NCBI GenBank assembly: GCA_964187785.1
Contig: OZ076416.1
Location: 54,932,001-54,996,000, forward strand
Source: Amphiscolops sp. MND2022
Taxonomy: Eukaryota
DNA: 64,000 nucleotides
Direction: 5' to 3'
Shown here: piece by piece, positions 1 to 21,800 of the stretch
Numbering within the stretch: the stretch's first letter is position 1
Layout of the letters: each line of letters opens with the position of its first letter
The notes under the pieces: model-generated
The model's input: only the letters and a program-made list of their open reading frames with translations
Database searches by the model: none
What the model was told of the DNA's origin: nothing
Position numbers and translations under genes: made by a program

Positions 1-812
1 TAGAAATTCGAAGAGTTTTGGGTCAGAAGAAAATTGAATTTGTTGAACTTTGTTGAATTTGAACTTCGAATATTATTCTCTTGTGCAGTGCATTTCTCTT
101 GTGCGTATTTAGAAATTCATTCGAGAAAACAATGTCACGTGCCTCCCCCCACTGTCTTAGTAAAACTCAGACAACACTGATCTGTAAAGCTTGAAATGCT
201 GTAATCTAGTGCCCAGTTTAAGCACAGTTAAGTTTAAGCCCAGTTCAAAAGTTCTTATGTTTTGGTGAAAGAACGTCGATCGGTTAATGCTGCCTTCGAG
301 TGTGACGAGAAAAGCACTGGAGACACCGCCAAGCTCTGGTCAATCCGAGCGTTTGTATTCTGACTGTGGGTTAACGGTTTTTGAGAAACGGCGAATTTTC
401 CCCGAGTTTTCTCCCCAGTTGAAAACGGCTAGTATAAATTAATGAATTTGACAATCATGCCGGCCCGTTGCCGAGTCTAGGTATAATACAGTCTCGATGA
501 TAATACAGTCTTCAGATGAATAACGTTCTAGCTCGTTCACTTTTTTTGTTCAAATAGCAAACTTCTTTTTGTAGTGTTGTGATAACTTTGCCTTTCCCAT
601 TAATATTTGAAACTAATTCCGATAGAAATTCGAAGAATTTTGGGTCAGAAGATCTTTGAATTTGTTGAACTTTGTTGAATTTGAACTTTGAATATTATTC
701 TCTTGTGCAGTGCATTTCTCTTGTGCGTATTTAAAAATTTATTCGAGAAAACAATGTCACGTGCCTCCCCCCACTGTCTTAGTAAAACTCAGACAACACT
801 GATCTGTAGAGC

Positions 813-1064
813 TTGAAGTGCTGTAATCTAGTGCCCAGTTCAAGTACAGTTAAGTTTAAGCCCAGTTCAAACGTTCTTATGTTTTGGGGAAAGAACGTCA
901 ATCGGTTTATGCTGCTTTCGAGTGTGACGAGAAAAGTACTGGAGACACCGCCAAGCTCTGGTCAATCCGAGCGTTTGTATTCTGACTGTGGGTTAACGGT
1001 TTTTGAGAGACGGCGAATTTTCCCCGAGTTTTCTCCCCAGTTGAAAACGGCTAGTATAAATTAA
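813..1064 (+). pseudogene. hAT transposase C-terminal dimerisation-domain fragment (representative copy; one per array unit)
   Basis: NVLMFWGKNVNRFMLLSSVTRKVLETPPSSGQSERLYSDCGLTVFERRR matches the hAT C-terminal consensus (L.WW...F..L..LARKYL..PA(S/T)S..SER.FS..G..V...R). The frame starts at TTG, there is no DDE core, and unit 1 has an in-frame TGA. Confidence 0.85.
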
Positions 1065-4000
1065 TGAATTTGACAATCATGCCGGCCCGTTGCCGAGTCT
1101 AGGTATAATACAGTCTCGATGATAATACAGTCTTCAGATGAATAACGTTCTAGCTCGTTCACTTTTTTGTTCAAATAGCAAACTTCTTTTTGTAGTGTTG
1201 TGATAACTTTGCCTTTCCCAATAATATTTGAAACTAATTCCGATAGAAATTCGGAGAGTTTTGGGTCAGAAGATCTTTGAATTTGTTGAACTTTGTTGAA
1301 TTTGAACTTTGAATATTATTCTCTTGTGCAGTGCATTTCTCTTGTGCGTATTTAGAAATTTATTCGAGAAAACAATGTCACGTGCCTCCCCCACTGTCTT
1401 AGTAAAACTCAGACAACACTGATCTGTAGAGCTTGAAATGCTGTAATCTAGTGCCCAGTTTAAGCACAGTTAAGTTTAAGCCCAGTTCAAACGTTCTTAT
1501 GTTTTGGGGAAAGAACGTCGATCGGTTAATGCTGCCTTCGAGTGTGACGAGAAAAGCACTGGAGACACCGCCAAGCTCTGGTCAATCCGAGCGTTCGTAT
1601 TCTGACTGCGGGTTAACGGTTTTTGAGAGACGGCGAGTTTTCTCCCCAGTTAAAAACGGCTAGTATAAATTAATGAATTTGACAATCATGCCGGCCCGTT
1701 GCCGAGTCTAGGTATAATACAGTCTCGATGATAATACAGTCTTCAGATGAATAACGTTCTAGCTCGTTCACTTTTTTGTTCAAATAGCAAACTTCTTTTT
1801 GTAGTGTTGTGATAACTTTGCCTTTCCCATTAATATTTGAAACTAATTCCGATAGAAATTCGAAGAGTTTTGGGTCAGAAGATCTTTGAATTTGTTGAAC
1901 TTTGTTGAATTTGAACTTTGAATATTATTCTCTTGTGCAGTGCATTTCTCTTGTGCGTATTTAAAAATTTATTCGAGAAAACAATGTCACGTGCCTCCCC
2001 CCACTGTCTTAGTAAAACTCAGACAACACTGATCTGTAGAGCTTGAAGTGCTGTAATCTAGTGCCCAGTTCAAGTACAGTTAAGTTTAAGCCCAGTTCAA
2101 ACGTTCTTATGTTTTGGGGAAAGAACGTCAATCGGTTTATGCTGCTTTCGAGTGTGACGAGAAAAGTACTGGAGACACCGCCAAGCTCTGGTCAATCCGA
2201 GCGTTTGTATTCTGACTGTGGGTTAACGGTTTTTGAGAGACGGCGAATTTTCCCCGAGTTTTCTCCCCAGTTGAAAACGGCTAGTATAAATTAATGAATT
2301 TGGCAATCATGCCGGCCCGTTGCCGAGTCTAGGTATAATACAGTCTCGATGATAATACAGTCTTCAGATGAATAACGTTCTAGCTCGTTCACTTTTTTGT
2401 TCAAATAGCAAACTTCTTTTTGTAGTGTTGTGATAACTTTGCCTTTCCCAATAATATTTGAAACTAATTCCGATAGAAATTCGGAGAGTTTTGGGTCAGA
2501 AGAAAATTGAATTTGTTGAACTTTGTTGAATTTGAACTTTAAATATTATTCTTTTGTGCAGTGCATTTCGCTTGTGCGTATTTAAAAATTCATTCGAGAA
2601 AACAATGTCACGTGCCTCCCCCAATGTCTTAGTAAAACTCAGACAACACTGATCTGTAGAGCTTGAAATGCTGTAATCTAGTGCCCAGTTTAAGCACAGT
2701 TAAGTTTAAGCCCAGTTCAAACGTTCTTATGTTTTGGCGAAAGAACGTCGATCGGTTTATGCTGCTTTCGTGTGTGGCGAGAAAAGTACTGGGGACACCG
2801 CCAAGCTCTGGTCAATCCGAGCGTTTGTATTCTGACTGTGGGTTAACGGTTTTTGAGAAACGGCGAATTTTCCCCGAGTTTTCTCCCCAGTTAAAAAAAG
2901 CCAGTATAAATTAATGAATTTGACAATCATGCCGGCCCGTTGCCGAGTCTAGGTATAATACAGTCTCGATGATAATACAGTCTTCAGATGAATAACGTTC
3001 TAGCTCGTTCACTTTTTTGTTGAAATAGCAAACTTCTTTTTGTAATGTTGTGATAACTTTGCCTTTCCCATTAATATTTGAAACTAGTTCCGATAGAAAT
3101 TCGAAGAGTTTTGGGTCAGAAGAACTTTGAATTTGTTGAACATTGTTGAATTTGAACTTTGAATATTATTCTCTTGTGCAGTGCATTTCTCTTGTGCGTA
3201 TTTAAAAATTTATTCGAGAAAACAATGTCACGTGCCTCCCCCCACTGTCTTAGTAAAACTCAGACAACACTGATCTGTAGAGCTTGAAATGCTGTAATCT
3301 AGTGCCCAATTTAAGCACAGTTAAGTTTAAGCCCAGTTCAAACGTTCTTATGTTTTGGGGAAAGAACGTCGATCGGTTTATGCTGCTTTCGAGTGTGACG
3401 AGAAAAGTACTGGAGACACCGCCAAGCTCTGGTCAATCCGAGCGTTTGTATTCTGACTGTGGGTTAACGGTTTTGGAGAGACGGCGAGTTTTCTCCCCAG
3501 TTAAAAACGGCTAGTATAAATTAATGAATTTGACAATCATGCCGGCCCGTTGCCGAGTCTAGGTATAATACAGTCTCGATGATAATACAGTCTTCAGATG
3601 AATAACGTTCTAGCTCGTTCACTTTTTTGTTGAAATAGCAAACTTCTTTTTGTAATGTTGTGATAACTTTGCCTTTCCCATTAATATTTGAAACTAATTC
3701 CGATAGAAATTCGAAGAGTTTTGGGTCAGAAGAAAATTTAATTTGTTGAACTTTGTTGAATTTGAACTTCGAATATTATTCTCTTGTGCAGTGCATTTCT
3801 CTTGTGCGTATTTAGAAATTTATTCGAGAAAACAATGTCACGTGCCTCTCCCCACTGTCTTAGTAAAACTCAGACAACACTGATCTGTAGAGCTTGAAGT
3901 GCTGTTATCTAGTGCCCAGTTCAAGTACAGTTAAGTTTAAGCCCAGTTCAAACGTTCTTATGTTTTGGGGAAAGAACGTCAATCGGTTTATGCTGCTTTC

Positions 4001-7000
4001 GAGTGTGACGAGAAAAGTACTGGAGACACCGCCAAGCTCTGGTCAATCCGAGCGTTTGTATTCTGATTGTGGGTTAACGGTTTTTGAGAAACGGCGAATT
4101 TTCCCCGAGTTTTCTCCCCAGTTGAAAACGGCTAGTATAAATTAATGAATTTGACAATCATGCCGGCCCGTTGCCGAGTCTAGGTATAATACAGTCTCGA
4201 TGATAATACAGTCTTCAGATGAATAACGTTCTAGCTCGTTCACTTTTTTTGTTCAAATAGCAATCTTCTTTTTGTAGTGTTGTGATAACTTTGCCTTTCC
4301 CATTAATATTTGAAACTAATTCCGATAGAAATTCGAAGAGTTTTGGGTCAGAAGATCTTTGAATTTGTTGAACTTTGTTGAATTTGAACTTTGAATATTA
4401 TTCTCTTGTGCAGTGCATTTCTCTTGTGCGTATTTAAAAATTTATTCGAGAAAACAATGTCACGTGCCTCCCCCCACTGTCTTAGTAAAACTCAGACAAC
4501 ACTGATCTGTAGAGCTTGAAGTGCTGTAATCTAGTGCCCAGTTCAAGTACAGTTAAGTTTAAGCCCAGTTCAAACGTTCTTATGTTTTGGGGAAAGAACG
4601 TCAATCGGTTTATGCTGCTTTCGAGTGTGACGAGAAAAGTACTGGAGACACCGCCAAGCTCTGGTCAATCCGAGCGTTTGTATTCTGACTGTGGGTTAAC
4701 GGTTTTTGAGAGACGGCGAATTTTCCCCGAGTTTTCTCCCCAGTTGAAAACGGCTAGTATAAATTAATGAATTTGACAATCATGCCGGCCCGTTGCCGAG
4801 TCTAGGTATAATACAGTCTCGATGATAATACAGTCTTCAGATGAATAACGTTCTAGCTCGTTCACTTTTTTGTTCAAATAGCAAACTTCTTTTTGTAGTG
4901 TTGTGATAACTTTGCCTTTCCCAATAATATTTGAAACTAATTCCGATAGAAATTCGGAGAGTTTTGGGTCAGAAGATCTTTGAATTTGTTGAACTTTGTT
5001 GAATTTGAACTTTGAATATTATTCTCTTGTGCAGTGCATTTCTCTTGTGCGTATTTAGAAATTTATTCGAGAAAACAATGTCACGTGCCTCCCCCCACTG
5101 TCTTAGTAAAACTCAGACAACACTGATCTGTAGAGCTTGAAATGCTGTAATCTAGTGCCCAGTTTAAGCACAGTTAAGTTTAAGCCCAGTTCAAACGTTC
5201 TTATGTTTTGGGGAAAGAACGTCGATCGGTTAATGCTGCCTTCGAGTGTGACGAGAAAAGCACTGGAGACACCGCCAAGCTCTGGTCAATCCGAGCATTT
5301 GTATTCTGACTGTGGGTTAACGGTTTTTGAGAGACGGCGAGTTTTCCCCGAGTTTTCTCCCCAGTTAAAAACGGCTAGTATAAATTAATGAATTTGACAA
5401 TCATGCCGGCCCGTTGCCGAGTCTAGGTATAATACAGTCTCGATGATAATACAGTCTTCAGATGAATAACGTTCTAGCTCGTTCACTTTTTTGTTGAAAT
5501 AGCAAACTTCTTTTTGTAATGTTGTGATAACTTTGCCTTTCCCATTAATATTTGAAACTAGTTCCGATAGAAATTCGAAGAGTTTTGGGTCAGAAGAACT
5601 TTGAAATTGTTGAACTTTGTTGAATTTGAACTTTGAATATTATTCTCTTGTGCAGTGCATTTCTCTTGTGCGTATTTAAAAATTTATTCGAGAAAACAAT
5701 GTCACGTGCCTCCCCCCACTGTCTTAGTAAAACTCAGACAACACTGATCTGTAGAGCTTGAAATGCTGTAATCTAGTGCCCAATTTAAGCACAGTTAAGT
5801 TTAAGCCCAGTTCAAACGTTCTTATGTTTTGGGGAAAGAACGTCGATCGGTTTATGCTGCTTTCGAGTGTGACGAGAAAAGTACTGGAGACACCGCCAAG
5901 CTCTGGTCAATCCGAGCGTTTGTATTCTGACTGTGGGTTAACGGTTTTTGAGAGACGGCGAGTTTTCTCCCCAGTTAAAAACGGCTAGTATAAATTATTG
6001 AATTTGACAATCATGCCGGCCCGTTGCCGAGTCTAGGTATAATACAGTCTCGATGATAATACAGTCTTCAGATGAATAACGATAGCAAACTTCTTTTTGT
6101 AATGTTGTGATAACTTTGCCTTTCCCATTAATATTTGAAACTAATTCCGATAGAAATTCGAAGAGTTTTGAGTCAGAAGAACTTTGAATTTGTTGAACTA
6201 AGTTGAATTTGAACTTTGAATATTATTCTCTTGTGCAGTGCATATCTCTTGTGCGTATTTAGAAAATTATACGAGAAAACAATGTCACGTGCCTCCCCCA
6301 CTGTCTTAGTAAAACTCAGAAAACACTGATCTGTAGAGCTTGAAATGCTGTAATCTAGTGCCCAGATTAAGCACAGTTAAGTTTAAGCCCAGTTCAAACG
6401 TTCTTATGTTTTGGGGAAAGAACGTCGATCGGTTTATGCTGCTTTCGAGTGTGACGAGAAAAGTACTGGAGACACCGCCAAGCTCTGGTCAATCCGAGCG
6501 TTTGTATTCTGACTGTGGGTTAACGGTTTTTGAGAGACGGCGAGTTTTCTCCCCAGTTAAAAACGGCTAGTATAAATTAATGAATTTGACAATCATGCCG
6601 GCCCGTTGCCGAGTCTAGGTATAATACAGTCTCGATGATAATACAGTCTTCAGATGAATAACGTTCTAGCTCGTTCACTTTTTTGTTCAAATTCCAAACT
6701 TCTTTTTGTAATGTTGTGATAACTTTGCCTTTCCCATTAATATTTGAAACTAATTCCGATAGAAATTCGAAGAGTTTTGGGTCAGAAGAACTTTGAATTT
6801 GATGAACTTTGTTGAATTTGAACTTTGAATATTATTCTCTTGTGCAGTGCATTTCTCTTGTGCGTATTTAGAAATTTATTCGAGAAAACAATGTCACGTG
6901 CCTCCCCCCACTGTCTTAGTAAAACTCAGACAACACTGATCTATAGAGCTTGAAATGCTGTAATCTAGTGCCCAGTTTAAGCACAGTTAAGTTTAGGCCC

Positions 7001-9038
7001 AGTTCAAACGTTCTTGTGTTTTGGGGAAAGAACGTCGATCGGTTTATGCTGCTTTCGAGTGTGCCGAGAAAAGTACTGGAGACACCGCCAAGCTCTGGTC
7101 AATCCGAGCGTTTGTATTCTGACTGCGGGTTAACGGTTTTTGAGAGACGGCGAGTTTTCTCCCCAGTTAAAAACGGCTAGTATAAATTAATGAATTTGAC
7201 AATCATGCCGGCCCGTTGCCGAGTCTAGGTATAAAACAGTCTCGATGATAATACAGTCTTCAGATGAATAACGTTCTAGCTCGTTCACTTTTTTGTTCAA
7301 ATAGCAAACTTCTTTTTGTAATGTTGTGATAACTTTGCCTTTCCCATTAATATTTGAAACTAATTCCGATAGAAATTCGAAGAGTTTTGGGTCAGAAGAA
7401 CTTTGAATTTGATGAACTTTGTTGAATTTGAACTTTGAATATTATTCTCTTGTGCAGTGCATTTCTCTTGTGCGTATTTAGAAATTTATTCGAGAAAACA
7501 ATGTCACGTGCCTCCCCCCACTGTCTTAGTAAAACTCAGACAACACTGATCTATAGAGCTTGAATTGCTGTAATCTAGTGCCCAGTTTAAGCACAGTTAA
7601 GTTTAAGCCCAGTTCAAACATTCTTATGTTTTGGGGAAAGAACGTCGATCGGTTTAAGCTGCTTTCGAGTGTGACGAGAAAAGTACTGGAGACACCGCCA
7701 AGCTCTGGTCAATCCGAGCGTTTGTATTCTGACTGTGGGTTAACGGTTTTTGAGAGACGGCGAGTTTTCTCCCCAGTTAAAAACGGCTAGTATAAATTAA
7801 TGAATTTGACAATCATGCCGGCCCGTTGCCGAGTCTAGGTATAATACAGTCTCGATGATAATACAGTCTTCAGATGAATAACGTTCTAGCTCGTTCACTT
7901 TTTTGTTCAAATAGCAAACTTCTTTTTGTAATGTTGTGATAACTTTGCCTTTCCCATTAATATTTGAAACTAATTCCGATAGAAATTCGAAGAGTTTTGG
8001 GTCAAAAGAACTTTGAATTTGTTGAACTTTGTTGAATTTGAACTTTGAATATTATTCTCTTGTGCAGTGCATTTCTCTTGTGCGTATTTAGAAATTTATT
8101 CGAGAAAACAATGTCACGTGCCTCCCCCCACTGTCTTAGTAAAACTCAGACAACACTGATCTATAGAGCTTGAATTTCTGTAATCTAGTGCCCAGTTTAA
8201 GCACAGTTAAGTTTAAGCCCAGTTCAAACGTTCTTATGTTTTGGCGAAAGAACGTCGATCGGTTTATGCTGCTTTCGTGTGTGGCGAGAAAAGTACTGGG
8301 GACACCGCCAAGCTCTGGTCAATCCGAGCGTTTGTATTCTGACTGTGGGTTAACGGTTTTTGAGAAACGGCGAATTTTCCCCGAGTTTTCTCCCCAGTTA
8401 AAAACGGCTAGTATAAATTAATGAATTTGACAATCATGCCGGCCCGTTGCCGAGTCTAGGTATAATACAGTCTCGATGATAATACAGTCTTCAGATGAAT
8501 AACGTTCTAGCTCGTTCACTTTTTTGTTCAAATAGCAAACTTCTTTTTGTAATGTTGTGATAACTTTGCCTTTCCCATTAATATTTGAAACTAATTCCGA
8601 TAGAAATTCGAAGAGTTTTGGGTCAAAAGAACTTTGAATTTGTTGAACTTTGTTGAATTTGAACTTTGAATATTATTCTCTTGTGCAGTGCATTTCTCTT
8701 GTGCGTATTTAGAAATTTATTCGAGAAAACAATGTCACGTGCCTCCCCCCACTGTCTTAGTAAAACTCAGACAACACTGATCTATAGAGCTTGAATTGCT
8801 GTAATCTAGTGCCCAGTTTAAGCACAGTTAAGTTTAAGCCCAGTTCAAACGTTCTTATGTTTTGGCGAAAGAACGTCGATCGGTTTATGCTGCTTTCGTG
8901 TGTGGCGAGAAAAGTACTGGGGACACCGCCAAGCTCTGGTCAATCCGAGCGTTTGTATTCTGACTGTGGGTTAACGGTTTTTGAGAAACGGCGAATTTTC
9001 CCCGAGTTTTCTCCCCAGTTAAAAAAAGCCAGTATAAA

Positions 9039-9240
9039 TTAATGAATTTGACAATCATGCCGGCCCGTTGCCGAGTCTAGGTATAATACAGTCTCGATGA
9101 TAATACAGTCTTCAGATGAATAACGTTCTAGCTCGTTCACTTTTTTGTTCAAATAGCAAACTTCTTTTTGTAATGTTGTGATAACTTTGCCTTTCCCATT
9201 AATATTTGAAACTAATTCCGATAGAAATTCGAAGAGTTTT
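9039..9240 (-). pseudogene. LINE ORF1-like (coiled-coil + LE.YS motif) fragment (representative copy; one per array unit)
   Basis: LQKEVCYLNKKVNELERYSSEDCIII resembles the coiled-coil-LEQYSR..L.I motif of L1/CR1-type ORF1 proteins. A shifted frame just downstream reads RLG...MIVKF, resembling the HRLG...IVKF RRM segment. Recognised by eye only. Confidence 0.5.
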
Positions 9241-9379
9241 GTGTGCCACTCATGGTTCTTGGTTGTCGCTGTGAACATCTTCACCGAACCTCATGTAGCA
9301 CACATGAACAACTAACATCAATATGACTTTCGATTGGTAGCAAAAAGTCTTTGGTTTTTGGACTGCCGGACAAATTGCA

Positions 9380-9700
9380 GCTGCTGGAGGCGAGGGTATC
9401 GCAAGACTAGAATCTGCGCGAGCTTAATTTCGCCAAAAACGGTGTTTCGTTTGCAATTAGAACGGACATTACCGACTTCAACCGCCTTGATTGGCTGTTT
9501 TGATTTCTGGAAAGCATGAATCAGAAAAAGGAACTTGTATGGATGGCCAGCTGTGACATCGGAATAAACAAACAGAAACCATCAAGAAGCAAGAGAACAC
9601 GTATCTGAATTATCAAATGACGAAAGACTTTTTGGAGTCCAGCTGCTCCCGAATTGGATATTAAATCGACTCTGGAGAAGCAAGAGCATGTCCCAAATCA
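9380..9700 (+). pseudogene. Possible decayed gag/protease remnant of an LTR retrotransposon
   Basis: KRCFVCN*NGHYRLQP near 9437 is a degenerate CX2CX4H knuckle lacking the last Cys. *IDSGEA near 9665 is a retropepsin-like D-S-G. Several stops are present. Confidence 0.3.
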
Positions 9701-10630
9701 TTAGACTGTGGATCAAAGGTAAGGTTCGAGACGCGAATTTTCTCGTGTGATACTCAATGGAATTGCGTTACCTACGGTTGAATGAGATTATTTTTATATT
9801 TTTACGTTCTTGGGTCTTGAGTTTGCGAGATGCCCATTTGGTGGTTTTTTTTCGCATATTTCGCAAACATGTGCCTATTTTTCAAGCTTGAGGCAAATTT
9901 CTCAAAACCGAAAAAAGATATGGATACCATGTTTTTGCTAAAAGTCACACAAGATCCTAGGCTACATTTTCGTCGAAAAAATAAAAAAAACTGACTTGGT
10001 TTTTTTGCAAAGAAGTTTCGAAAAAACGCAAATTTTGAGTGTTTCTCATCTTTGATCCCCTATATCTAAGAACTGAGACCGAATACAGAGTGCATGGTTT
10101 CGTAAATTATACAAGCATTTTATAGGCTACATTTTACTTGTTTTTAATACTACTTGGGCAAAAATTTTCTCATTTGTAGTTCATATTTCTCAAAAGTGAT
10201 TAAAAAACACAGAAACCATTCTCCCTCAAGAAGTACAGCACGGATGTAGGCTAGTTTTTGTACCAACTCAGTTTCCGTCATCAAGTATGACGCCTTCGTT
10301 TTTCTACTCGTTTTTTCATTTTTTTCCAACTTCTTTCATACTCGAGCTCCTTTATCTCAAGACCGAGACGAAATACGGAGTCCATGGTTTCGTAAAATTT
10401 ACGAGGCTTCTGTAGTCTACGTTTTAGGCTAAAAATGACGTCGAATTTTTTTCGTTATTTTTTTGGGCAAATAAAGGGATGAAAAAATCTCCTTTTTTCC
10501 TATTTGTGACCGATTTTTCTGAATTGAAAATAGATACAGAAACCATTCGTCCTCAAAAAGGGTGTGGTCTAGTTTTTTACCATCTAAGTTTCCGTCCTGA
10601 AGTATGGCGAATTCGGGTTTCAGCCATCAA

Positions 10631-11691: not shown

Positions 11692-12279
11692 AACCAGAGC
11701 CGCATACGCGGTAAAGGAGTCGGCTTAAGTATTTTTCCTTCTAACTCGCTCGAATCCCAGTCACGCGAATTTGATGAAATTGCAAATATAGGACCATAAT
11801 GTGGTGTAGAATCACTCTACAAAATTTCGTTCGAATTGTATGGACAGGTTTTGCGAAAATTGAAAAAGTCCAAAAATAGCCGTTTTTTGATCATTTTAGG
11901 ACTATTTTTGGCTTTGTTTCTCAGCTGCCAGTCATACGATTTTGATGCCAATGCACATATAGGACTCTAATATGGGGTAGAATGACTGTAGAAAATTTCG
12001 TTCGAATCGTATGGACAGTTTTTGATAAAATTGGAAAAAGTCCAAAATTGGCTGTTTTCTGGCCATTTTTAGGCTCATTTTGGCAATGTTTATCAGATCC
12101 CAGCTATACGATTTTGATGCCATTGCGTACGCAAGAGCTCCTTTGGGTGTAGAATGACTGCAAAACTTTATGAAAATAGTATGGACAGTTTTTGAGAAAT
12201 TTGAGATTTTCATTGAAAGGTTGGGAGAAAAAACGTCACGACTGCATAAGTAGTCGAAAATTTTTCCGACATCTAAAAA
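11692..12279 (-). mobile_element. Helentron/DINE-1-like non-autonomous element, family B
   Basis: In element orientation it starts TTTTT-AG(G)AGTCGG (degenerate here) and ends CCGACTCCT + palindrome CCGC(G)TATGCGG + CTCTGGTT, with internal ~170-bp repeats. An isolated 3' terminus also occurs at about 10930. Confidence 0.7.
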
Positions 12280-12556
12280 TGAGAATTCATAAACTTTCAA
12301 AAATCCCTTAAAAGGATGATGAAGGCTTCTTTAATAAGGATAACTCGTGGTCGAAGCAAGTGATAAAGATTTCCCTCTTGAAGTTTCTTCGGAAAAAATG
12401 GAAAAAGCACTTAACTTTCTTATACAGTTCAAGCCAAAACCACATTCAAGAGTTCCCATTAATTCCCGGTTTATATTTGCCTTCTGTATTCAGGATCCAA
12501 AAGGCATTAGTAATTGTGCTCCCAACTTTATAAGCCGCAATTAATTCATGCTCCTG

Positions 12557-12562
12557 TTTATT
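12557..12562 (-). promoter_or_regulatory. Candidate polyadenylation signal (AATAAA) of galactokinase
   Basis: AATAAA on the minus strand about 100 nt downstream of the TAA stop. Confidence 0.5.
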
Positions 12563-12579
12563 TTGTCTACGGTGTGATA

Positions 12580-12627
12580 GAAGCCGCGGGTAATGAATGT
12601 ACTGATTCGAGCCCTACCCGCGGCTTC
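12580..12627. other. 13-bp GC-rich perfect stem, 22-nt loop, in the galK 3' UTR
   Basis: GAAGCCGCGGGTA (12580-12592) is the reverse complement of TACCCGCGGCTTC (12615-12627). Confidence 0.85.
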
Positions 12628-12660
12628 AATTCTAATAAATAATGCTGCCAATAAATAAAG

Positions 12661-12824
12661 TTAGGAAAGAATGAAGGCTTTAGCTCCTTGTTGTGGCGTG
12701 GCCAGGAAAAACTGTGGCTTCCTGTGATGACATTTCTCGTTATAAATGTTCTTCACAGCTGCAATGACGTCATTAATTTCAGACTTCTTCAGCAGAACCA
12801 CGCAACAGCCACCAAACCCACCGC
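12661..12824 (-). CDS. GALK1: galK exon 6 (GGFGGC...GAKAFILS*), 164 nt
   Basis: Acceptor CTCTACAG completes ARITGGGFGG; stop TAA at 12663-12661. Confidence 0.95.
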
Positions 12825-15800
12825 CTGTAGAGATGCTCAAAGATAATGATGTCAATTTTAATGTACTGGGTATATAAAAACAAGACGGGAACGTCTAAAG
12901 TCGGCGCTATATCTAAGGCTCAAAAAGCGCAAAAAGCTTTTTGAAAAAAACTTGAAATTTTTGATCTTCTTCCTTTCAGAAAATATCGCATAGTGCCGAA
13001 AAATGTAAAAGGGGCCCTTTGGGCTTTATTAACATATATTCTGTTGCAAAATATCAAAAAAACTCGAAAGGGGGACTCTTTTGAGACATTAAAAAAATTC
13101 CGAAAAAAGTCGCACAGTGCCGAAAAAAAATTGAAAGGGGAGACCCTTTAGTCTCTTCTGGTTTTGTAGGTTACGTAAAAAAAGGTTAAAAATGAAAGGG
13201 GGACCCTTTGCACTAAGTTTGCATTGCAAAGAACGTGTCAAGAAACTTATTTAAATAGCATGAATGGGAGTTACTAATTGTATAAGTTCATTGGCAGCCC
13301 GATGGAATCAATGAAAATTATTTTTGGTTATTTTGGACCCAACTGCTTGGGACAGAAATGCCTTTGAATTACATGTCTGGCACCGAAATGTTACTTTTTA
13401 CAACATCACGAAATAAAGCTCAGTATAAAAATCGGCTCATTTGGAGTTCGGTAAAATTTGTTACTGCAAAAACTTCCAAATAAATTTCAAGACGTACACT
13501 GACTACTGCCAGTCAATTTCTTTTAACCCCAATGAACCTAGTGATGCTTTAAAGCAGCCTACCTTTTTTTTCAAATTCTGATTCCTTTTGCCAGTAGCCC
13601 ATTTTCTCTAGCACAGTTTTTTTTCAACAAGTAATTGGTACCTAGATTGATTTGAATGGTACAAGCATTAGAAAAAGGGAATATATCTCCAAAGCTGAGA
13701 AAAATGGGTTTTTTGCACAAAAAAAGAGTTATATTTTCTCAATATTCAGATTTTGACGAAATCCTGTTTTCTCAAAAGTCTTTGATCAATAGAAACCAGA
13801 GCCGCATATGCGGTAAAGGAGTCGGCTTAAGTCTTTTTCCTTCTGACTCGCTTTCGTTCGAATCGTATGAACAGTTTGTAAGAAAATCGAAAAATGACTG
13901 TTTTTTTGGCCATTTTTGGGCTAAATTTGGCTATGTTTCTCACATCCCAGCCATACGAATTTAATGAAATTGCACATAAAGGACCATAATATGGTGGAGA
14001 ATAACTGTAGAAAATTTCGTTCGAATCGTATGGACAGTTTTTGAGAAAATCGAAAAAAATCGAAAAATGACTTTTTTTTGGCCATTTTTGGGCTAATTTT
14101 GGCTATGTTTCTCACATCCCAGCCATACGATTTGGATGCCATTGCACATATAGGACTCTAATATGCTGTAGAATAACTGTAGAAAATTTCGTTCGAATCG
14201 TATGGACAGTTTTTGAGACCAGAGCCGCATATGCGGTAAAGGAGTCGGCTTAAGTCTTTTTCCTTCTGACTCGCTTTCGTTCGAATCGTATGAACAGTTT
14301 GTGAGAAAATCGAAAAAATCGAAAAATGACTGTTTTTTGTCCATTTTTGGGCTGATTTTGGCTATGTTTCTCACATACCAGCCATACGATTTTGATGCCA
14401 TTGCACATATAGGACTCTAATATGGTGTAGAATAACTGTAGAAAATTTCGTTCGAATCGTATGGACAGTTTTTGAGAAAATCGAAAAAAGTCGAAAAATG
14501 GCCGTTTTTTGGCCATTTTTGGGCTAATTTTGGCTATGTTTCTCACATCCCAGCCATACGATTTTGATGCCATTGCACACGCAGGGGCCCCTTCGGGTGT
14601 AGAATGACTGTGCAAAATTTCGTGAAAATCGTATGGACAGTTTTTGAAAAATTTGAAATTTTCATGAAAAGGTCGGGAGAAAAAAAACAGCACGATTGCA
14701 TAAGTAGTCGAAAATTTTTCCGACTCCTAAAAACCAACCACATACCCTTCCACAACAAGTCCTGGTGCAACAAACCCCTATAATATTCTGTTGTTACTAC
14801 AAGCCCCCGCGCAGCGGCGGTACCGGAAAAAGAGACTAAAATTCTGAAGGAAGGGGCGCGCGCGACAGGGGCTCACCTGACCAAAATGAAAGCCCAATAT
14901 CAGACCTTTCAAACGCGCTATAGTTCATTCCTCTGGTACGCGTAGTTGTGGAGATATTGATGATTGAAATTTTTTTGGCAAATTTTTCGAAAATTTTAAA
15001 AAACGCCCAGGTCGATTGGGCTTAAGTACGAAAAAATCAAGAGAATTCTGTATATCATGCAAACTTATCGCAGCAATTTTTAATCTTGACATTTGCATAC
15101 GAAAGGAAAATCCAACGTTTTACTGGAAGCATCAAATGAAAACGACTACAAGCATATGCCTGAAATAAATGAGAACAAAGAATTTTATATTAGAAAAATA
15201 GGCCCCTGTGGGGCACAGTATTATTTCTGCTTTTAGGCTTTCATGTTCAATAATAGAAGCATATCTTAATCATCTATATAGCGCACAATTAATCACTCTA
15301 CCAGTTTACACCGCCTTTAATTTTTCTCGGACTTTAGAAAATATAACTATTAAGCGTAGATGAAGTTTGGTATTCGCATTTGAATGCAGGCGAAGCTGTC
15401 GGCGAACGAACTCGATAGCTTCATCTCAATGAATTCGGCGTACGAATGCATAATTACCACTCGCTCATTCCATCGCACGAGAAACGAATTGTTGTCGGCA
15501 GCTTGAAAAATTTAAATGTCACGCTTAAACTCACTGCCGAACAAAATATCTGAATTTCTCAGTAGGTACTCGGAATCAGACGAAAATTGAACTGAAAAAA
15601 AAAGTTGGAAGAATTCAGATTTCAATAATATTCCTGCTATCGCAGAAATAAGAATAAAAGGGGAATAAGGAAGCTTTCGTGGAACTCATGACAGTTTGAG
15701 AGATAGTAGCAGCAAAAGCAGTTCCACTGCGGTATTTTTTCGTTTGCTGGTACAAAAAGTTACTTAGGAAAGATCGGGCGGGAACTCACAGAAAAAAAAC

Positions 15801-18800
15801 TGAATTTTTACTAAGTAAGAAAAAAGACCTGAAAAAGGACATTGGCGAAATTACCATTGATGTTACAAGGAACGTACGCGAGACTTTTGCAAAAAACGAT
15901 TCGTCAAAGTAACTAAAGGGGCGAAACAATTTGACGCGTTTGTTCACTTCGAGCATCTCTGTGGCTAACCAACCTGTTATCCTAGCCCCAAGAACACCGG
16001 GTTGTTTCATAGCACAACCAACTAAGAGGTCAACTTCAGGACAACTGACCTCGTAGAGGTCACGCAGAGACTCATGGGATTCGGCCATTAGATGTCCAAT
16101 TATTTTAAGGTCACTGTTGTTGGTTGATTTCGTCAGAATTTCCGCAACCTGTTGTGTCCTGTTTATTTCTTTAATCACATGCAACGCTTTTTTCCAATGG
16201 TCTTCCCCAATCTCATCTTTCTTCTCGTGAAGATTTTCTAAATTCGTGTCTCTCAGTGTTTCCACGCCTGAAACAACGTGTGTTAGAGCCGCAGAAAAAC
16301 GAAGAACAAGCCGGAACCGGCCCAAGTCGGCGGCCCGCTCAAATTTCTTGCATATGCAAGAATACTTTTTTCAAACTTTTATCACTTTCTCGAGACCAAA
16401 AAATATCCCAAAGAATACGCATTCGACTCGGGAACCACATTTTTCCCAACTGGTAACAAAAAATCCTTTTCCCAAAAATTTTTAGATTTTTTCCAAAAGT
16501 CTTAAAGTGTCGAAAAAGGAACTATCAGCTCAAAAAACTACCTTTTCCCAAGCCGAAATCCGCTCTGGAAGTGGGAGGGTGCCTTTGACCAAATGAAAAT
16601 TTCTGAAAATTTCGTTAATAAAGCACAGAGCCAAAAAAGCTTTAACAAAGTATAATAAAGTATTGAAAATAAAACAGCTGTTCGGTTCAGTTGAAAAAGA
16701 ATATGGTCTCGCAATACCAAAAAATCCAAAGGGGGGCTTTGGCTTCGAATGATTTTGTATCAACTCTAAGAATCCTAAAAATCAAAAGGGGGACCCTTTT
16801 GTATCATTGAAAAATTCCCCCCCCCCCCCCCACGAAACGTTATATCCAGTTTGCGCCAAAAAATATAAAGGGGGGTCATTTGGCTTCAATGATTTTGTAC
16901 TAACTCTAAATATCCTGAAAATTGAACGGGGGGACCCTTTTGTAAAATCGAAAAATTCTCTAAGAAACATTATATCCGGTATACGTTATATGGGTTGTGT
17001 TATTGTCGAAGGGCTCCTTTACAGTTTAAATGTAGTATGTCGATGGCCAAAAGGGACTGAAGCGAAAACTGAACCAGAACTTTTGGTAGAACTATTTCGG
17101 GCAGTTCAGGTATATCCGAAAAGCAACGATTGACAGCGCCCACAAAAATTCACGCGAAGTATTTCGCTATTTTTATCCGAATTTCTCCTTAAAATTGCAC
17201 AATTTTCAGACAACAAGGTTGCTTCAGGTTGAAAAGCTCGAGCATGACTTGAGGTTATAGTATACTTGGAAAAAGATGATTGTTTTAAACTCACTCCGTG
17301 GCACAAAATCAGATACTAAATTATAATGATCAGTAGATTATTTTTACTCGGCGCTTTTATAAAACAAGCCGGGAACGGCCCAAGTCGGCGCCATATCTCA
17401 GGCTCAAAAATACCAAAAGGACTTCCAAAGTATCGGTGAATTGGGGACCCTTTTATGAATTTTTTTTGAAAAGTCTCACCATGCCGAAAAAAACTGGAAG
17501 GGGGGACTCTTTGGGATTTTTCAAAATCCATTCTGTCGGAATATATCCAAACAATTGAAGGGGGACCGACCCTTCGGTGAATTTTTTTTGAAAAAAAGTC
17601 TCACAGAGCCGAAAATACTCTAAGGGAGTACCCTTTGGCCCCCTTGAGTTTCTTAGATGATGTAAAAATACTACTTCGTAAGCTAAGTAAGAATTGTAAG
17701 AAATTGTGAGATTGTAAGAATTGTAAGAAAAGTGGACCATTCAGGGTGAGATCGTCAGCTGAAAAAAAACTACCCACTGTAATAGTCGGGAAAAGAGCCC
17801 GACTATTACAGACACTCCTTTCTTTCTGTTTTTATTATTCTCATTTTTCGTTTTTTTTGAAAATTTTTTCATGTCACCAAAAGCTAACTCTTCAATTTTT
17901 TTGATAACTGGTAATCAAACGGAAAACAAATCATTTTCTAATTTTATATTTCAAAAATTTCAAACCTCTATAAACCAGAGCCCCATATGCGGTAAAGGAG
18001 TCGGCTTAGGTCTTTTTCCTTCTGACTCGCTCCAATCCCAGTCATACGAATTTATTGAAATTGCACACATAGGACCATACTATGGTGTAGAAAATGACTG
18101 TAGAAATTTTCGTTCGAATCGTATGGACAGTTTTAGCAAATGAAAAAAAGTCAAAAAATGGTTGTTTTTTGGCCATTTTTGGATTAATTTTGGCTATGTT
18201 TCTCACATCCCAGCAATACAAATTTGATGAAATTACACACAAAGGGCCATAATATGGTGTAGAAAAACTGTACAAAATTTCGTTCGAATCGTATAGACAG
18301 TTTTTGCGAAAATCAAAAAAAGTCGAAAAATGGCTGTTTTTGGGCTAATTTTGGTCATTTTTGGGCTGATTTTGGCTGTTTCTCACATTCCAGCCATGCG
18401 ATTTCGATGTCTTTGCGCACGCAGGGGCCCCTTTTGGTGTAGAATGACTGTGCAAAATTCTATGAAAATCGTATGGACAGTTTTCGAGAAATTTGAAATT
18501 TTCATGAAAAGGTCGGGAGAAAAAAAAACAAAAAAAAAACGACACGATTGCATAAGTAGTCGAAAATTTTTTCCGACTCCTAAAAACAAAAACGACACGA
18601 TTGCATAAGTAGTCGAAAATTTTTTCCGACTCCTAAAAACAAAAACGACACGATTGCATAAGTAGTCGAAAATTTTTTCCGACTCCTAAAAATCAAATAT
18701 TGCGAACCTCAACACTGAAAGTGCGTTAATCTGGTAAATAGAAAAAGCTTCAAATATTCTGCTGATCCTATCACGAGTCACGATTTTTCATCGTTTGAGC

Positions 18801-21800
18801 CCTATCGATGTAAACCACCTAAATATAATAACATGGTCCTTTAGGAGGAACTACAGAGTATTAATTAGGATGAAATCATGGGAGAAACAAAGGAGCACAC
18901 TAACCGAGACACTGTGCAACTTTCTCGCACATGGCTCTGCGTTTCCTGTATGGCCCGTCTCCCAGGTTATGTTTGACCCCAGAGTTGATTACGAGGAAAG
19001 CGTAGTCCGAGTAGTCAAATCTGAGGTGGGTTGTCGACTGCGTTTTACAGTCCAAAAGAAGAAGATGGTTTTCCTAGAACAGTACCAAAAACTAATTTAT
19101 TCAAACAAATACGGAACTTCAAGCGGAAAAAGAAGTTCTTAATATCGAAAATGAATGTCCGTACCAGGAAATCCATCAAAGCTATAATAATTGAAGTACC
19201 GCAAACCCAAGACATTGAAAACAATTCAATCATTTTGCAAAAAACCCAAATTTTGTACCAACAATCCGCGTGTAACATATCTTTCCGCAAGTGTTTTTCA
19301 CGCAATTGAAGAACCTTTATATCGCACGAAAAATAGATTTTAGAAAAAATTCGAAAATGTAATTTCGAGAATAGTAAAATCAAAAAACGCAGTGTCATTG
19401 TGATATTTTTTGTTTGCTGGTACAAGAAGCTTTTAGGAAAAGATTGCTCGTGTAATTAAGGGAACTGAATTTTCGCAAAAAAACGTAACGGGAGAATGGA
19501 CGAAAGGTTACCTGACAAAGAACACTAGCGAACTGGTCCATGATGCCACAAGGCACGTTGGCGAAGTTGTGTTCGGCTCTCTGGCACGCCAGCGCCTTGG
19601 CCACTTTTTCACTGTGGTGCCCAGACATGCTCTCCAGAAAGGTGTAAACAGCTGCTTCCAGACTGGCAGAGCTGGAAAGACCGGCTCCCAGTGGAACCGA
19701 AGAGGATATGACGCAATCGAAGCCCTGGCTCAGGGGATGGTTCTGACTGAATTCATGCACTGTGCCTAAAGTTTATTTGAAAAACAAATTGCGGCTCTCT
19801 CGGTAACAGCACATTCCAAGTTAGCATCCACTCAAGAAAGCTGTTACATGTCCAAAAGGAAGAACATCTCAAAATATGGATATGATAAACATTGATTTGA
19901 CTTCACATTGCAAAAGCAGCGAAGTTAATTCATTTTACATTGTCTCTATAGAGCCATGAGTCCAAAAACGGGTTCTGTGCTGAACCCTCAAATTTCCTTT
20001 GAAGAAAAGTTTGCTTTTTCAGCGAGTAGATTGAATCAAACTGACACCTATAATCTTTTTCGGGAACATGAGGAAATTTCTGCTATTTATAACCGAATGC
20101 TTTCAAAGTCTTTTTTTTCCGGTACTCAGTTTTTTGTCTTGAAGAATTCTTTAAACAAAAGAAGAGAGTGTCATAGTCGGGCGAATCAGGTCTCAACTAA
20201 AAGCGCCGACTAAAAGAACTGTGACGTACCTAGAACGTAGTTAGCCCATGTGAAGTTTTTGTCCGTAATAGACGACAGAGGACAGCTTTCAGAATCCTCA
20301 GGCAGCTCTATCTGGTAGGACTTGTGATCGACACTCTTCTCATTCGTGTGTAACCTGTTAAGAGATGAATCATGAGAAGACAACAAACGCTACAGAAAAT
20401 GAAACTCTTACACTTGCCCACAAAAGTCAGCGGCGATGCCACTTTAGTAAGGACTCAATTTTTAAAGACGAAGACAAACAAGCCGGTAGAGCCCTCTTAA
20501 TGCTCAACAAGCCGGGACCGGCCCAAGTCGGCGCCATATCCAAGGCTCAAAAATAGCAAAAGGACTTCCAAGTGTCAATTTACAGTACTCGAAAATCAAA
20601 AACCAAAAAAATGGACAGAGTGGCGCGCCGGGGCCCGCTAGCGCGTGCCACTGGCGCGCTAAAAGGGGGACACTTCCGAAATTGTCAACATTTTTGTCGC
20701 AGTTGAAAGGGGACCCTTTGGAGAAAAAACAAATTTTCGGAAAAAAATCTCACAATGCCGAAACAAAACTGAAATGGGGGACCCTTTGGGGATTTTTCAA
20801 CATCCATTCTGTCGCAAAACATCAAAAATATTGAAGGGAGGAAAAATTTTTATTTTCGGAAAAAAATCTCACAATGCCGAAAAAAACTGAAAGGGGGGAC
20901 CCTTTGGGGTTTTTCAACATCCATTCTGTCGCAAAACAGCAAAAATTTGAAGGGAGGAAAATTTTTATTTTCGGAAAAAATCTCAATGCCGAAAAACTGA
21001 AAAGGGGACCCTTTGGGATTTTTCAACATCCATTCTGTCGCAAAACATCAAAAAATTGAAGGGAGGAAAAATTTTTATTTTCGGAAAAAATCTCAATGCC
21101 GAAAAACTGAAAAGGGGACCCTTTGGGATTTTTCAACATCCATTCTGTCGCAAAACATCAAAAAATTGAAGGGAGGAAAAATTTTTATTTTCGGAAAAAA
21201 TCTCACAATGCCGAAAAACTGAAAAGGGGACCCTTTGGGATTTTTCAACATCCATTCTGTCGCAAAACATCAAAAAATTGAAGGGAGGAAAAATTTTTAT
21301 TTTCGGAAAAAATCTCACAATGCCGAAAAACTGAAAGGGGGGACCCTTTGGGATTTTTCAACATCCATTCTGTCGCAAAACAGTAAAAAATTTGAAGGGG
21401 GACACCCTTTGGGGAAAAATTTGGCGAACAAAAAAGTCTCGCAGTGCCGAAAAAAATTGAAAGGACCTCGCCTGGTATGGCATGTCTCGCCCGGTATGGT
21501 ATGCCTCGCCCAGTATGATATGTTACGCGGGAAAACAGGAAAAACCTTTTTGGTTCAGTTCGCTAGGGAAAATGGTGCAATTTGGTGCAATAATATTTTG
21601 TAGAACTTTTAAGAACTATTTTGGTCAGTTCGTGTGTATTGAAAAAAAAGAGTCACTATAATAGTCCCGTTTCACTTCATGAAGCGCCGACTAAAAAGAA
21701 CAGGGTCGCCTGTTGAAAAAAATATAATTGAGAAGCTATCGTCAACCTCACAGTACCAAAAATATCCAAAGGGACTTTTTCAGACTAAAAACGTTTTCTC

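What the first reader, a model, noticed from the sequence alone, without database searches (positions are those of the whole stretch)
1..9240. Satellite array made from the hAT transposase dimerisation domain
Seen: at least 15 tandem ~615-bp units, each carrying the hAT C-terminal motif (FW...RKVL.TPPSSGQSERLYS.CG); 14 of 15 keep a 76-83-codon open frame, with an internal in-frame ATG (MFW...). Known: this domain mediates hAT transposase multimerisation, and TE-derived satellites usually come from termini or UTRs. Inference: amplifying this coding module could make the locus a small-RNA source against hAT transposase mRNA, or a source of short dominant-negative peptides. The window also shows hAT activity (three TSD-flanked insertions). 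Neutral amplification is a fair alternative, since low divergence alone can keep frames open.
Basis: partly seen in the sequence, partly recalled or inferred. Interest (0 to 1): 0.7.

Follow-up and report, generated by a model that had tools for sequence, protein, structure and literature searches.

The report
Single-locus tandem array of transposon scraps
A 15.6-kb run of 25 head-to-tail copies of a ~620-bp patchwork of dead mobile-element pieces (the tail end of a hAT transposon, the start of a LINE gene on the opposite strand, and a spacer) sits at one place in this animal genome and evolves as neutral DNA, so it is a tidy but ordinary example of how new repeats are born from transposon remains.

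Summary
The window holds 15 tandem units of 583-622 bp, and the array continues 6.4 kb upstream of the window, giving 25 full units over about 15.6 kb. Each unit carries a hAT C-terminal fragment; Pfam Dimer_Tnp_hAT scores up to 33.6 bits against a cutoff of 21.4.

The unit is not just a dimerisation-domain module. It is a composite of three parts:
- The last ~239 bp of a hAT element, ending exactly at its 3' terminal inverted repeat.
- The first ~60 codons of a LINE ORF1, on the opposite strand.
- A ~190-bp spacer, partly related to a third repeat.

The unit exists only at this one locus in the 1.07-Gb assembly.

I found no sign of protein-level constraint:
- Omega is about 0.86. Neutrality is not rejected, and omega of 0.4 or less is rejected.
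- Variants hit the three codon positions 14, 14 and 18 times.
- The coding segment varies more than the non-coding hAT end.
- Only 12 of 25 units keep the full frame.
- The 'in-frame ATG' is a satellite-specific K-to-M change.
- The nearest hAT relatives are all dead.

No RNA data exist, so the small-RNA idea stays untested. I judge it a young, neutrally evolving composite transposon-derived array, a new member of a known kind. Earlier scan notes report similar single-locus arrays elsewhere in this genome.

The parts
1..9241 (+). Window part of the tandem array: 15 units (m11-m25) plus the terminal ~20 bp. The whole array runs from 6,372 bp upstream of the window (L034:3628 = C8:54925628) to window 9241, with 25 full units over about 15.6 kb.
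   Evidence: unit boundaries; edge sequences
623..1243 (+). Reference unit m12 (621 bp). Unit position 1 = window 623, the register used throughout the report.
674..862 (.). Spacer (unit ~52-240), origin unresolved. It lies next to the LINE ORF1 start, where a LINE 5'UTR would be. In the genome it occurs only in this array and at three loci (C211, C6, C5). Unit 150-228 is ~83% identical to part of a third dispersed repeat of ~1.5 kb. It ends in a 16-bp imperfect duplication just before the junction with the hAT part.
   Evidence: distribution; related loci; 16-bp duplication
863..1101 (+). hAT 3'-terminal fragment (unit 241-479). It holds the last ~65 codons of a transposase (Dimer_Tnp_hAT), a shortened 3'UTR and the complete 3' TIR ending at window 1101.
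813..1064 (+). 83-codon open frame, counted stop to stop, with stop codon at 1062-1064. Only about residues 21-70 are hAT-homologous. The upstream ~20 codons are read from spacer sequence.
1087..1101 (-). Outer 15 nt of the hAT terminal inverted repeat (TAGACTCGGCAACGG). It occurs once per unit, always in the 3'-end orientation, with no mismatches in all 15 window units. There is no 5' TIR in the unit.
   Evidence: compare the L032 TIRs
1102..1294 (-). LINE ORF1 fragment on the minus strand (unit 480-621 plus 1-51 of the next unit), covering ORF1 residues ~6-66. It is 88-91% identical to a young LINE family. Protein-level similarity extends to about unit position 65.
9242..9796 (.). Right flank: ~555 bp of sequence unique in the genome, then a dispersed repeat. 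It is not a continuation of the LINE or of the unit.

Best explanation
This is a young, single-locus, composite transposon-derived tandem array that evolves neutrally.

Proposed history:
1. A hAT element integrated into the 5' part of a LINE ORF1. The hAT terminus abuts LINE sequence exactly, which is shown.
2. The hAT was fractured so that only its 3'-terminal ~239 bp remained next to the LINE start and a spacer. This step is inferred.
3. One ~620-bp segment of this nested debris was duplicated in tandem. The repair-type junction is most likely between the spacer and the internal hAT sequence, where a 16-bp imperfect duplication sits. This step is inferred.
4. The dimer expanded to 25 copies by unequal exchange, which still shuffles multi-unit blocks. 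The interspersed near-identical units are shown; the mechanism is inferred.

The open frames persist because the array is young (mean unit identity 96.8%) and the frame is short, not because a peptide is selected.
For: Structure:
- 25 units, 94-100% identical, with near-identical units interspersed (m10, m12, m14 and m18 at 99.4-99.8%; m2, m3, m4 and m11; m7, m9 and m17) and no regular period.
- The hAT fragment is 90% identical to a 697-bp deleted hAT with TIRs and the TSD GCTCTTGG. Homology starts at unit 241 and ends at the TIR tip, unit 479.
- The LINE ORF1 start lies on the minus strand. The parent family has APE and RT domains, and its copies are 99.4-99.8% alike.

Distribution:
- The spacer search finds exactly 25 copies, all in this array, plus 3 other loci.
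- Both flanks are unique sequence.

Neutrality:
- 13 synonymous, 32 non-synonymous and 1 stop variant, with codon positions hit 14, 14 and 18 times.
- Kappa-corrected omega is 0.86. The test against neutrality gives p=0.61. Omega of 0.4 or less has p=0.011, and 0.3 or less has p=0.0006.
- The LINE frame, used as a control, behaves alike (5 synonymous, 28 non-synonymous, 1 stop).
- The hAT coding segment has 24 variants per 100 bp, against 10.9 in the hAT 3'UTR and TIR.
- An 11-bp frameshift deletion is shared by 7 units, a TGA by 5, and one unit has a +1 insertion.
- Compared with relatives, the satellite lineage has 12 non-synonymous and 3 synonymous codon changes, including loss of conserved Pro and Ala. 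The ATG is a derived K-to-M change.

Other:
- No Rfam family or tRNA lies in the unit.
- Composite TE-derived monomers and ORF-derived satellites are described kinds (PMC12628747, PMC9659126). A single-locus hobo array of ~16 copies and the dimer-then-unequal-exchange model are in PMC5932611.
Against: - Expression was never tested. No RNA run on record holds the array, so a non-coding RNA role cannot be excluded.
- Variation is unevenly spread along the unit (chi-square p=0.0014). Unit 433-621 is about half as variable as the average and unit 1-51 about twice as variable. That could reflect a constraint on DNA or RNA rather than on protein.
- The array edges do not fit a simple in-situ duplication. 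It starts at unit 466, inside the hAT TIR, and ends at unit 20, inside the LINE part, which makes 25.28 units. Neither flank continues the unit. So either the edges were eroded or the array arose differently.
- No progenitor locus with the same junctions was found elsewhere.
Confidence: 0.78

Rival explanations
1. Small-RNA source locus. The array is transcribed, either by read-through or from a promoter in the LINE-5'-like part. It would yield piRNAs or siRNAs that are sense or antisense to the hAT 3' end and to the 5' end of the LINE ORF1, damping those elements.
For: - Each unit joins fragments of two transposon classes in opposite orientation, so any single transcript is antisense to one of them.
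- The LINE family is very young, with copies 99.4-99.8% alike and ORF1, APE and RT domains present. A live target therefore exists.
- The least variable part of the unit is the hAT end plus the LINE ORF1 piece.
- piRNA clusters are known to be rich in TE relics (PMC12628747).
Against: - No RNA data at all.
- The fragments are 9-12% diverged from their nearest genomic relatives.
- The hAT family has no intact copy among scored candidates, so one proposed target is already dead.
- The locus is small (15.6 kb) and flanked by unique sequence near a possible host exon.
- Several comparable arrays in this genome were judged inert in earlier notes (these are unchecked leads).
Confidence: 0.1
2. Source of short dominant-negative peptides. 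The 54-61-residue MFW... peptides would bind hAT transposase through the dimerisation region and poison it.
For: - 19 of 25 units have an open frame beginning with or containing an ATG.
- The region matches Dimer_Tnp_hAT.
Against: - Omega is about 0.86 and codon positions are hit evenly.
- Two different C-termini arise from an 11-bp frameshift, 5 units share a stop after codon 3, and one has a frameshift.
- Conserved residues of the domain are replaced, and Pfam scores fall from 47.7 bits in the relative to 15-34 bits.
- The last ~17 positions of the domain profile are missing.
- The ATG is a derived mutation.
- No intact transposase of this family was found. The other open hAT frames in the genome are only 35-49% identical.
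Confidence: 0.02
3. Same neutral array, but with a different seed event: alternative (two-element) hAT transposition. The fractured hAT 3' end, used together with another terminus, was joined by transposase to a nearby target in the LINE fragment. This would create the first tandem duplication, so the hAT-tip-to-LINE junction is the novel one.
For: - Every unit ends exactly at the hAT terminal nucleotide and then continues with LINE sequence.
- hAT (Ac/Ds) termini of nearby elements are shown to generate tandem direct duplications with such junctions (PMC3744419).
- The TIR is perfectly conserved in all 15 window units.
Against: - An ordinary hAT insertion into a LINE gives the same junction.
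- There is no 5' terminus and no second TSD copy in the unit to check.
- The 16-bp filler-like duplication sits at the other junction, spacer to hAT, which looks more like the repair junction.
- The array edges match neither model.
Confidence: 0.12
4. Same neutral array, but not born in place. A ~620-bp circle or a pre-formed array segment from a now-lost progenitor was amplified, for example by rolling-circle replication of extrachromosomal DNA, and then inserted here.
For: - The array holds a non-integer number of units (25.28).
- Its two edges fall at unrelated unit positions (466 and 20).
- Both flanks are unique and continue neither the hAT nor the LINE.
- No remnant of the rest of the hAT or LINE lies beside the array.
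Against: - No target-site or microhomology signature was recognised at the edges.
- No second array or progenitor exists in the assembly.
- Edge erosion by deletion explains the same facts.
- The leftmost partial unit is the most diverged (91.7%), as expected for an old in-situ edge.
Confidence: 0.08

Closest known systems
Composite satDNA monomers from 'TE graveyards' (review PMC12628747)
   Same: The monomer consists of consecutive stretches similar to different transposons: a hAT 3' end, LINE ORF1 and a third repeat. This is consistent with tandem amplification of a nested or shuffled TE-remnant locus.
   Different: This is a single 15.6-kb locus with unique flanks near a possible host exon, not an abundant heterochromatic satellite. 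The pieces are still long and clearly assignable, at about 90% identity to relatives.
Satellites derived from TE coding regions: chicken HinfI from CR1 ORF2, Phodopus PROsat from L1 ORF2, rye E3900 from gag, Chenopodium CficCl-61-40 from a CACTA transposase gene (listed in PMC9659126)
   Same: The tandem unit includes part of a transposon ORF with a recognisable residual reading frame.
   Different: Two ORF fragments from two TE classes lie on opposite strands. The hAT ORF piece comes together with the element's own terminus, so the array also fits the more common terminus or UTR origin.
hobo (hAT) tandem array in D. melanogaster strain I03 and the double-insertion model (PMC5932611)
   Same: A hAT-derived, single-locus, euchromatic array of a few tens of copies. 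The two-step model applies: a seed dimer, then unequal exchange.
   Different: The hobo units carry both TIRs, separated by an 8-bp target-site motif. Here each unit has only a 3' TIR and no inter-unit TSD, so double insertion of whole elements is excluded.
Tandem direct duplications made by alternative transposition of maize Ac/fAc (PMC3744419)
   Same: A fractured hAT 3' end lies at the unit boundary, and the junction sits exactly at the transposon terminus.
   Different: That mechanism yields one duplication with a diagnostic 8-bp TSD. Here no second terminus or TSD can be checked, and 25 copies need further unequal exchange.

Membership tests
hAT transposon-derived sequence | Match to the hAT C-terminal dimerisation region (Pfam PF05699) above the gathering score | tested here: met
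   33.6 and 28.7 bits against a cutoff of 21.4 for two unit variants. Two other variants score 20.6 and 15.3, below the cutoff. The related element L032 scores 47.7 bits.
hAT transposon-derived sequence | Homology to an element with hAT-type TIRs and an 8-bp target-site duplication | tested here: met
   L032:5071-5767 has 24-nt TIRs beginning TAG and the TSD GCTCTTGG on both sides. The unit is 90% identical over 147 bp and 97% identical over the 30 bp that include the TIR.
Complete non-autonomous hAT element repeated in tandem (double-insertion type) | Both TIRs in each unit, with a target-site motif between units | tested here: not met
   The TIR motif occurs once per unit and only in the 3' orientation. 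There is no 5' TIR.
Classical satellite DNA | Head-to-tail tandem organisation of a defined monomer | tested here: met
   25 units of 583-626 bp.
Classical satellite DNA | High copy number, long arrays, usually at several loci | tested here: not met
   The assembly holds exactly 25 copies at one locus. Unitig depth relative to the flank in 4 runs fits tens of copies, which is only a rough measure.
Composite TE-derived tandem repeat | Monomer made of adjacent stretches homologous to different TE families | tested here: met
   hAT at unit 241-479. LINE ORF1 at unit 480-621 plus 1-65, minus strand. A third repeat at unit 150-228.
Domesticated or dominant-negative transposase-derived peptide gene | Purifying selection on the reading frame | tested here: not met
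   Omega is 0.86. Neutrality is not rejected (p=0.61) and omega of 0.4 or less is rejected (p=0.011). Codon positions are hit 14, 14 and 18 times.
Domesticated or dominant-negative transposase-derived peptide gene | Intact, uniform ORF across copies | tested here: not met
   12 units have the full frame, 7 share an 11-bp frameshift, 5 share a premature TGA and 1 has a +1 frameshift.
Domesticated or dominant-negative transposase-derived peptide gene | Expression and translation | not testable with these tools
   No RNA run on record holds the array. The four runs that hold it are contigs of DNA-like depth.
piRNA/siRNA-producing TE-fragment cluster | Small RNAs mapping to the locus | not testable with these tools
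   No RNA or small-RNA run is available.

The most novel reading that the evidence does not exclude
The array is a compact two-target silencing trap. Each unit would keep a LINE 5'-end promoter-like segment that transcribes through the LINE ORF1 start and into the hAT 3' end in antisense. Alternatively, read-through from the neighbouring minus-strand gene would do the same. The 25 copies would then feed small RNAs against a currently active LINE family and a hAT family. The unusually low variation of unit 433-621 would reflect selection on that RNA.
Probability: 0.06. Interest if true: 0.55.

Novelty: new member of a known kind. Interest (0 to 1): 0.2.

Why it matters
The array is a clean, datable snapshot of an early stage of tandem-repeat birth from nested transposon debris. 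The parental pieces are still recognisable to the base, including an exact hAT terminus joined to a LINE ORF1. The array is small, sits at a single locus and is still being reshuffled. It illustrates the 'composite monomer' route proposed in recent reviews. It also shows why open frames in young arrays should not be read as evidence of coding function. It opens no new question by itself. Together with the other single-locus arrays noted in this genome, it may indicate an unusually high rate of local tandem amplification in this species.

Tried and rejected
- TRF cannot see the array because its longest period is 500. I used the repeat finder and BLAST instead.
- A strict screen for hAT insertions with exact 11-mer TIRs found nothing. 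A relaxed screen found one MITE, not three.
- I looked for a paralogous empty site or a larger host repeat around the array. The left flank has ~125 bp of unique sequence after an LTR-like repeat, and the right flank has ~555 bp unique, so no empty site exists.
- I compared the flanks with the LINE, the hAT and each other. Only the array-derived ends match.
- I asked whether the spacer is the 5'UTR of an extant LINE subfamily. No LINE copy in the assembly carries it. It occurs only here and in a 5-kb low-copy repeat on C6, C5 and C211, so its origin is unresolved.
- I looked for an intact transposase of the same hAT family. The nearest relatives are a 697-bp deleted element and two copies with stops and only short ORFs. 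Only 150 of 268 candidates were scored, so this is not exhaustive.
- The expression test failed for lack of data. No RNA run holds the array, and the four runs laid are DNA-like contigs.
- Rfam and tRNA scans of the array found no match.
- The protein atlas gave only generic hAT clusters and no useful taxon.
I made the comparison in a script with stops shown as such.
- A regular higher-order repeat period is rejected, because the lag-identity profile is flat.
Full report
OBSERVATION

The tandem array is real. The repeat finder places 15 in-register copies in window 1-9240 at spacings of 582-622 bp. TRF missed it only because its period limit is 500. Pfam recognises the hAT C-terminal dimerisation region, PF05699. 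Four unit variants score 33.6, 28.7, 20.6 and 15.3 bits against a gathering score of 21.4, over profile positions 12-67 of 84.

The window is C8:54932001-54996000 of a 1.07-Gb eukaryotic assembly, and it cuts the array. The 10 kb upstream (L034) shows that the array starts at L034:3628. It therefore has 25 full units (583-626 bp), a 156-bp partial unit on the left and ~20 bp on the right, about 15.6 kb in all.

ANATOMY OF THE UNIT (unit position 1 = window 623)

A search of the whole genome with one unit returned three separate kinds of partial match.

(a) hAT part, unit 241-479.
- Its closest relative is at C9 (L032). That element is 697 bp long and internally deleted, with 24-nt TIRs (TAGACTTGGCAACGG...) and a perfect 8-bp TSD (GCTCTTGG).
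- It encloses a 139-aa ORF whose C-terminus scores 47.7 bits for PF05699.
- The unit is 90% identical to it over 147 bp of coding sequence and 97% identical over the 30 bp that include the TIR.
- The TIR motif occurs exactly once per unit, always in the 3'-end orientation, with no mismatches in all 15 window units. There is no 5' TIR.
- So the amplified hAT piece is the 3'-terminal ~239 bp of an element: the last ~65 codons, a shortened 3'UTR and the TIR.

(b) LINE part, unit 480-621 continuing into 1-51 of the next unit.
- It is 88-91% identical to a dispersed family whose copies are 99.4-99.8% identical to each other and share one end.
- That family encodes a 301-aa ORF1, an APE endonuclease and a reverse transcriptase on the opposite strand.
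- The segment in the unit is ORF1 residues ~6-66, read on the minus strand (...KLFEFLSELVSNIN...ELERYSS.DCIII...). Protein-level similarity reaches about unit position 65.
- The LINE similarity begins directly after the last base of the hAT TIR. This is the signature of a transposase-made junction, meaning a hAT end integrated into LINE ORF1 sequence.
I verified that here.

(c) Spacer, unit ~52-240.
- It occurs in the genome only in this array (exactly 25 hits) and at three loci on C211, C6 and C5.
- At those loci it is again contiguous with the LINE piece, and it lies near one end of a ~5-kb low-copy repeat without long ORFs.
- Unit 150-228 is ~83% identical to part of a third dispersed repeat of ~1.5 kb and unknown class.
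- The spacer sits where a LINE 5'UTR would be, but no extant LINE copy carries it, so its origin is unresolved.
- Just before the spacer-to-hAT junction there is a 16-bp imperfect duplication. It looks like filler at a repair junction; that is an inference.

DISTRIBUTION AND SETTING

- The unit exists only at this locus.
- The immediate flanks are unique sequence: ~125 bp on the left after an LTR-like repeat, and ~555 bp on the right. Neither flank continues the hAT, the LINE or the unit.
- The array begins at unit position 466, 13-14 bp inside the hAT TIR, and ends at unit position 20, inside the LINE piece. That makes 25.28 units, so the edges do not fit a simple duplication of one segment.
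- A possible host exon (GHMP-kinase C-terminal domain, minus strand) lies ~6.5 kb to the right.
- Four public runs from one study (two samples) hold the array as contigs. The flank has depth 24-49 and array unitigs have depth ~200-1,800. That is compatible with tens of copies, but the tool warns that depth is a poor measure.
- The right junction contig (9212-9700) is present in both samples.

ARRAY DYNAMICS

Units are 94.2-99.8% identical, with a mean of 96.8%. There is no regular higher-order period. Near-identical units are interspersed, in the groups m10/m12/m14/m18, m2/m3/m4/m11, m7/m9/m17 and m13/m19. This is the pattern expected from recent multi-unit unequal exchange. The leftmost partial unit is the most diverged, at 91.7%.

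TEST OF PROTEIN-LEVEL CONSTRAINT

- Among the 25 units, the hAT frame carries 46 substitution variants: 13 synonymous, 32 non-synonymous and 1 stop. Codon positions are hit 14, 14 and 18 times (chi-square p=0.71).
- With a transition/transversion bias estimated from the rest of the unit (kappa ~1.8), the neutral expectation for the synonymous fraction is 0.254 and the observed fraction is 0.283. Omega is about 0.86 and the test against neutrality gives p=0.61.
- Omega of 0.4 or less is rejected at p=0.011, and omega of 0.3 or less at p=0.0006.
- The LINE ORF1 frame on the other strand serves as an internal control. It is equally 'open' in the consensus and gives 5 synonymous, 28 non-synonymous and 1 stop variant.
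- The hAT coding segment is more variable (24 variants per 100 bp) than the hAT 3'UTR plus TIR (10.9) and the main LINE piece (10.5). The heterogeneity is significant at p=0.0014.
- Frame status over 25 units: 12 keep the full consensus frame, 7 share an 11-bp deletion that shifts the C-terminus, 5 share a TGA three codons after the ATG, and 1 has a +1 insertion.
- Compared with L032 and two further relatives, the satellite lineage shows 12 non-synonymous and 3 synonymous codon differences. These include replacement of the conserved Pro in RFPLL and of the Ala in the ...ASS... motif.
- The 'internal in-frame ATG' is itself a derived Lys-to-Met change.
- The nearest relatives are all dead: one internally deleted element and two copies with stops and only short ORFs. 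The other open hAT frames in the genome are only 35-49% identical.

These results contradict a selected peptide. They also remove one proposed target of silencing, with the caveat that only 150 of 268 candidates were scored.

WHAT COULD NOT BE TESTED

Expression could not be tested. No run on record as RNA holds the array. The small-RNA hypothesis is therefore neither supported nor refuted. No Rfam family or tRNA lies in the units.

MECHANISM

Shown:
- The unit is a mosaic of at least three repeat families.
- The hAT-to-LINE junction is exactly at the transposon terminus.
- The array is at a single locus.
- Near-identical units are interspersed.
- There is no protein-level constraint.

Inferred:
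- A hAT inserted into a LINE ORF1 5' region and was later fractured.
- A ~620-bp stretch of the debris was duplicated once, most likely with the spacer-to-hAT junction as the repair junction.
- Unequal exchange expanded it to 25 copies.

Two alternative seed events cannot be excluded. One is transposase-mediated duplication of the Ac/fAc type (PMC3744419), which would make the hAT-tip-to-LINE junction the novel one. The other is insertion of a pre-amplified segment, which the odd array edges and the unrelated flanks hint at.

COMPARISON WITH KNOWN KINDS

- Satellites containing TE ORF fragments are on record: CR1 ORF2, L1 ORF2, gag and a CACTA transposase gene (PMC9659126).
- Composite monomers built from several TEs have been described and explained by amplification within nested TE remnants (PMC12628747).
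- A single-locus hAT (hobo) array of ~16 copies, and the model of a seed dimer followed by unequal exchange, are in PMC5932611. That model's double insertion of whole elements is excluded here, because the units lack a 5' TIR and an inter-unit TSD.
- The locus fails the copy-number and multi-locus criterion of a classical satellite.

Earlier notes of this scan (unchecked by me) report other young single-locus arrays in the same genome. They include one grown from a piece of a hAT transposase gene (s1-151641), one from a Helitron arm (s1-188609) and one from a SET-domain exon (s1-193574). The scan has therefore seen this kind of thing before on other DNA of this genome.

VERDICT

The 'coding module' framing is too narrow: the unit is a hAT 3' end plus an antisense LINE ORF1 start plus a spacer. 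The peptide function is contradicted and the small-RNA function is untested. The best reading is a young, neutrally evolving, composite TE-derived tandem array, a new member of a known kind and of low to moderate interest.

Noticed in passing
L031:6088-9930 (C13:48559687-48563529) and about 25 further loci (L006-L030): A very young LINE family. Its copies are 99.4-99.8% identical over at least 1.77 kb and share the same 5' end. It has a 301-aa ORF1, an APE endonuclease and an RT. It is probably still active, and it is the parent family of the LINE piece in the array.
   Followed up: partly
L032:5071-5767 (C9:38335070-38335766): A 697-bp internally deleted hAT element with 24-nt TIRs, a perfect 8-bp TSD (GCTCTTGG) and an intact 139-aa ORF ending in the dimerisation region (47.7 bits). 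It is a naturally occurring 'C-terminus only' hAT ORF.
   Followed up: partly
L033:4634-9900 (C6), the matching region on C5 (L059/L003) and C211 (L001): A ~5-kb low-copy repeat, 98% identical between C6 and C5, with internal tandem repeats and no long ORF. About 280 bp near one end equals the LINE piece plus spacer of the array unit, at 83-89% identity. Whether it is the ancestor or a derivative of the array unit is unknown.
   Followed up: partly
window unit positions 433-621 versus 1-51 (for example window 1055-1243 versus 623-673): Variation among the 25 units is uneven (chi-square p=0.0014). The hAT 3'UTR and TIR plus the main LINE piece have ~10.5-11 variants per 100 bp, while the first 51 bp of the unit have 37 per 100 bp. 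This is unexplained. It could reflect conversion tracts or some constraint at the DNA or RNA level.
   Followed up: partly
window 38915-39257: A 343-bp hAT-like MITE with TIRs CAGAGTTTTGACAC.../CAGGGTTTTGACAT... and the perfect 8-bp TSD ATCAGAAA. It belongs to a different family from the hAT in the array. It was the only clean TSD-flanked hAT-type insertion found by a strict screen.
   Followed up: partly
window 53706-54005 and 57530-57829 (also ORFs at 56443-56898 and 60267-60722): A direct duplication with 3,824-bp spacing and 100% identity over the 300 bp compared. This is another very recent local tandem duplication in the same window.
   Followed up: no
window 11803-18354 and 20733-21399: Several short arrays of a 172-bp repeat (1.9-2.3 copies each, 78-92% matches), with a 431-bp higher period at 13795-14647. 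There is also a 110-bp repeat of 5.9 copies at 20733-21399.
   Followed up: no
window 15789-16325 (minus strand): An open frame with a GHMP-kinase C-terminal domain (26.5 bits against a cutoff of 21). It is a possible host-gene exon ~6.5 kb from the array. A dead RT fragment lies at 27352-27891.
   Followed up: no
L060:2079-3564 (C12), L061, L062: A ~1.5-kb dispersed repeat of unknown class, with copies ~98% identical and no TIRs or long ORFs seen. It shares ~80 bp at ~83% identity with the array's spacer.
   Followed up: partly
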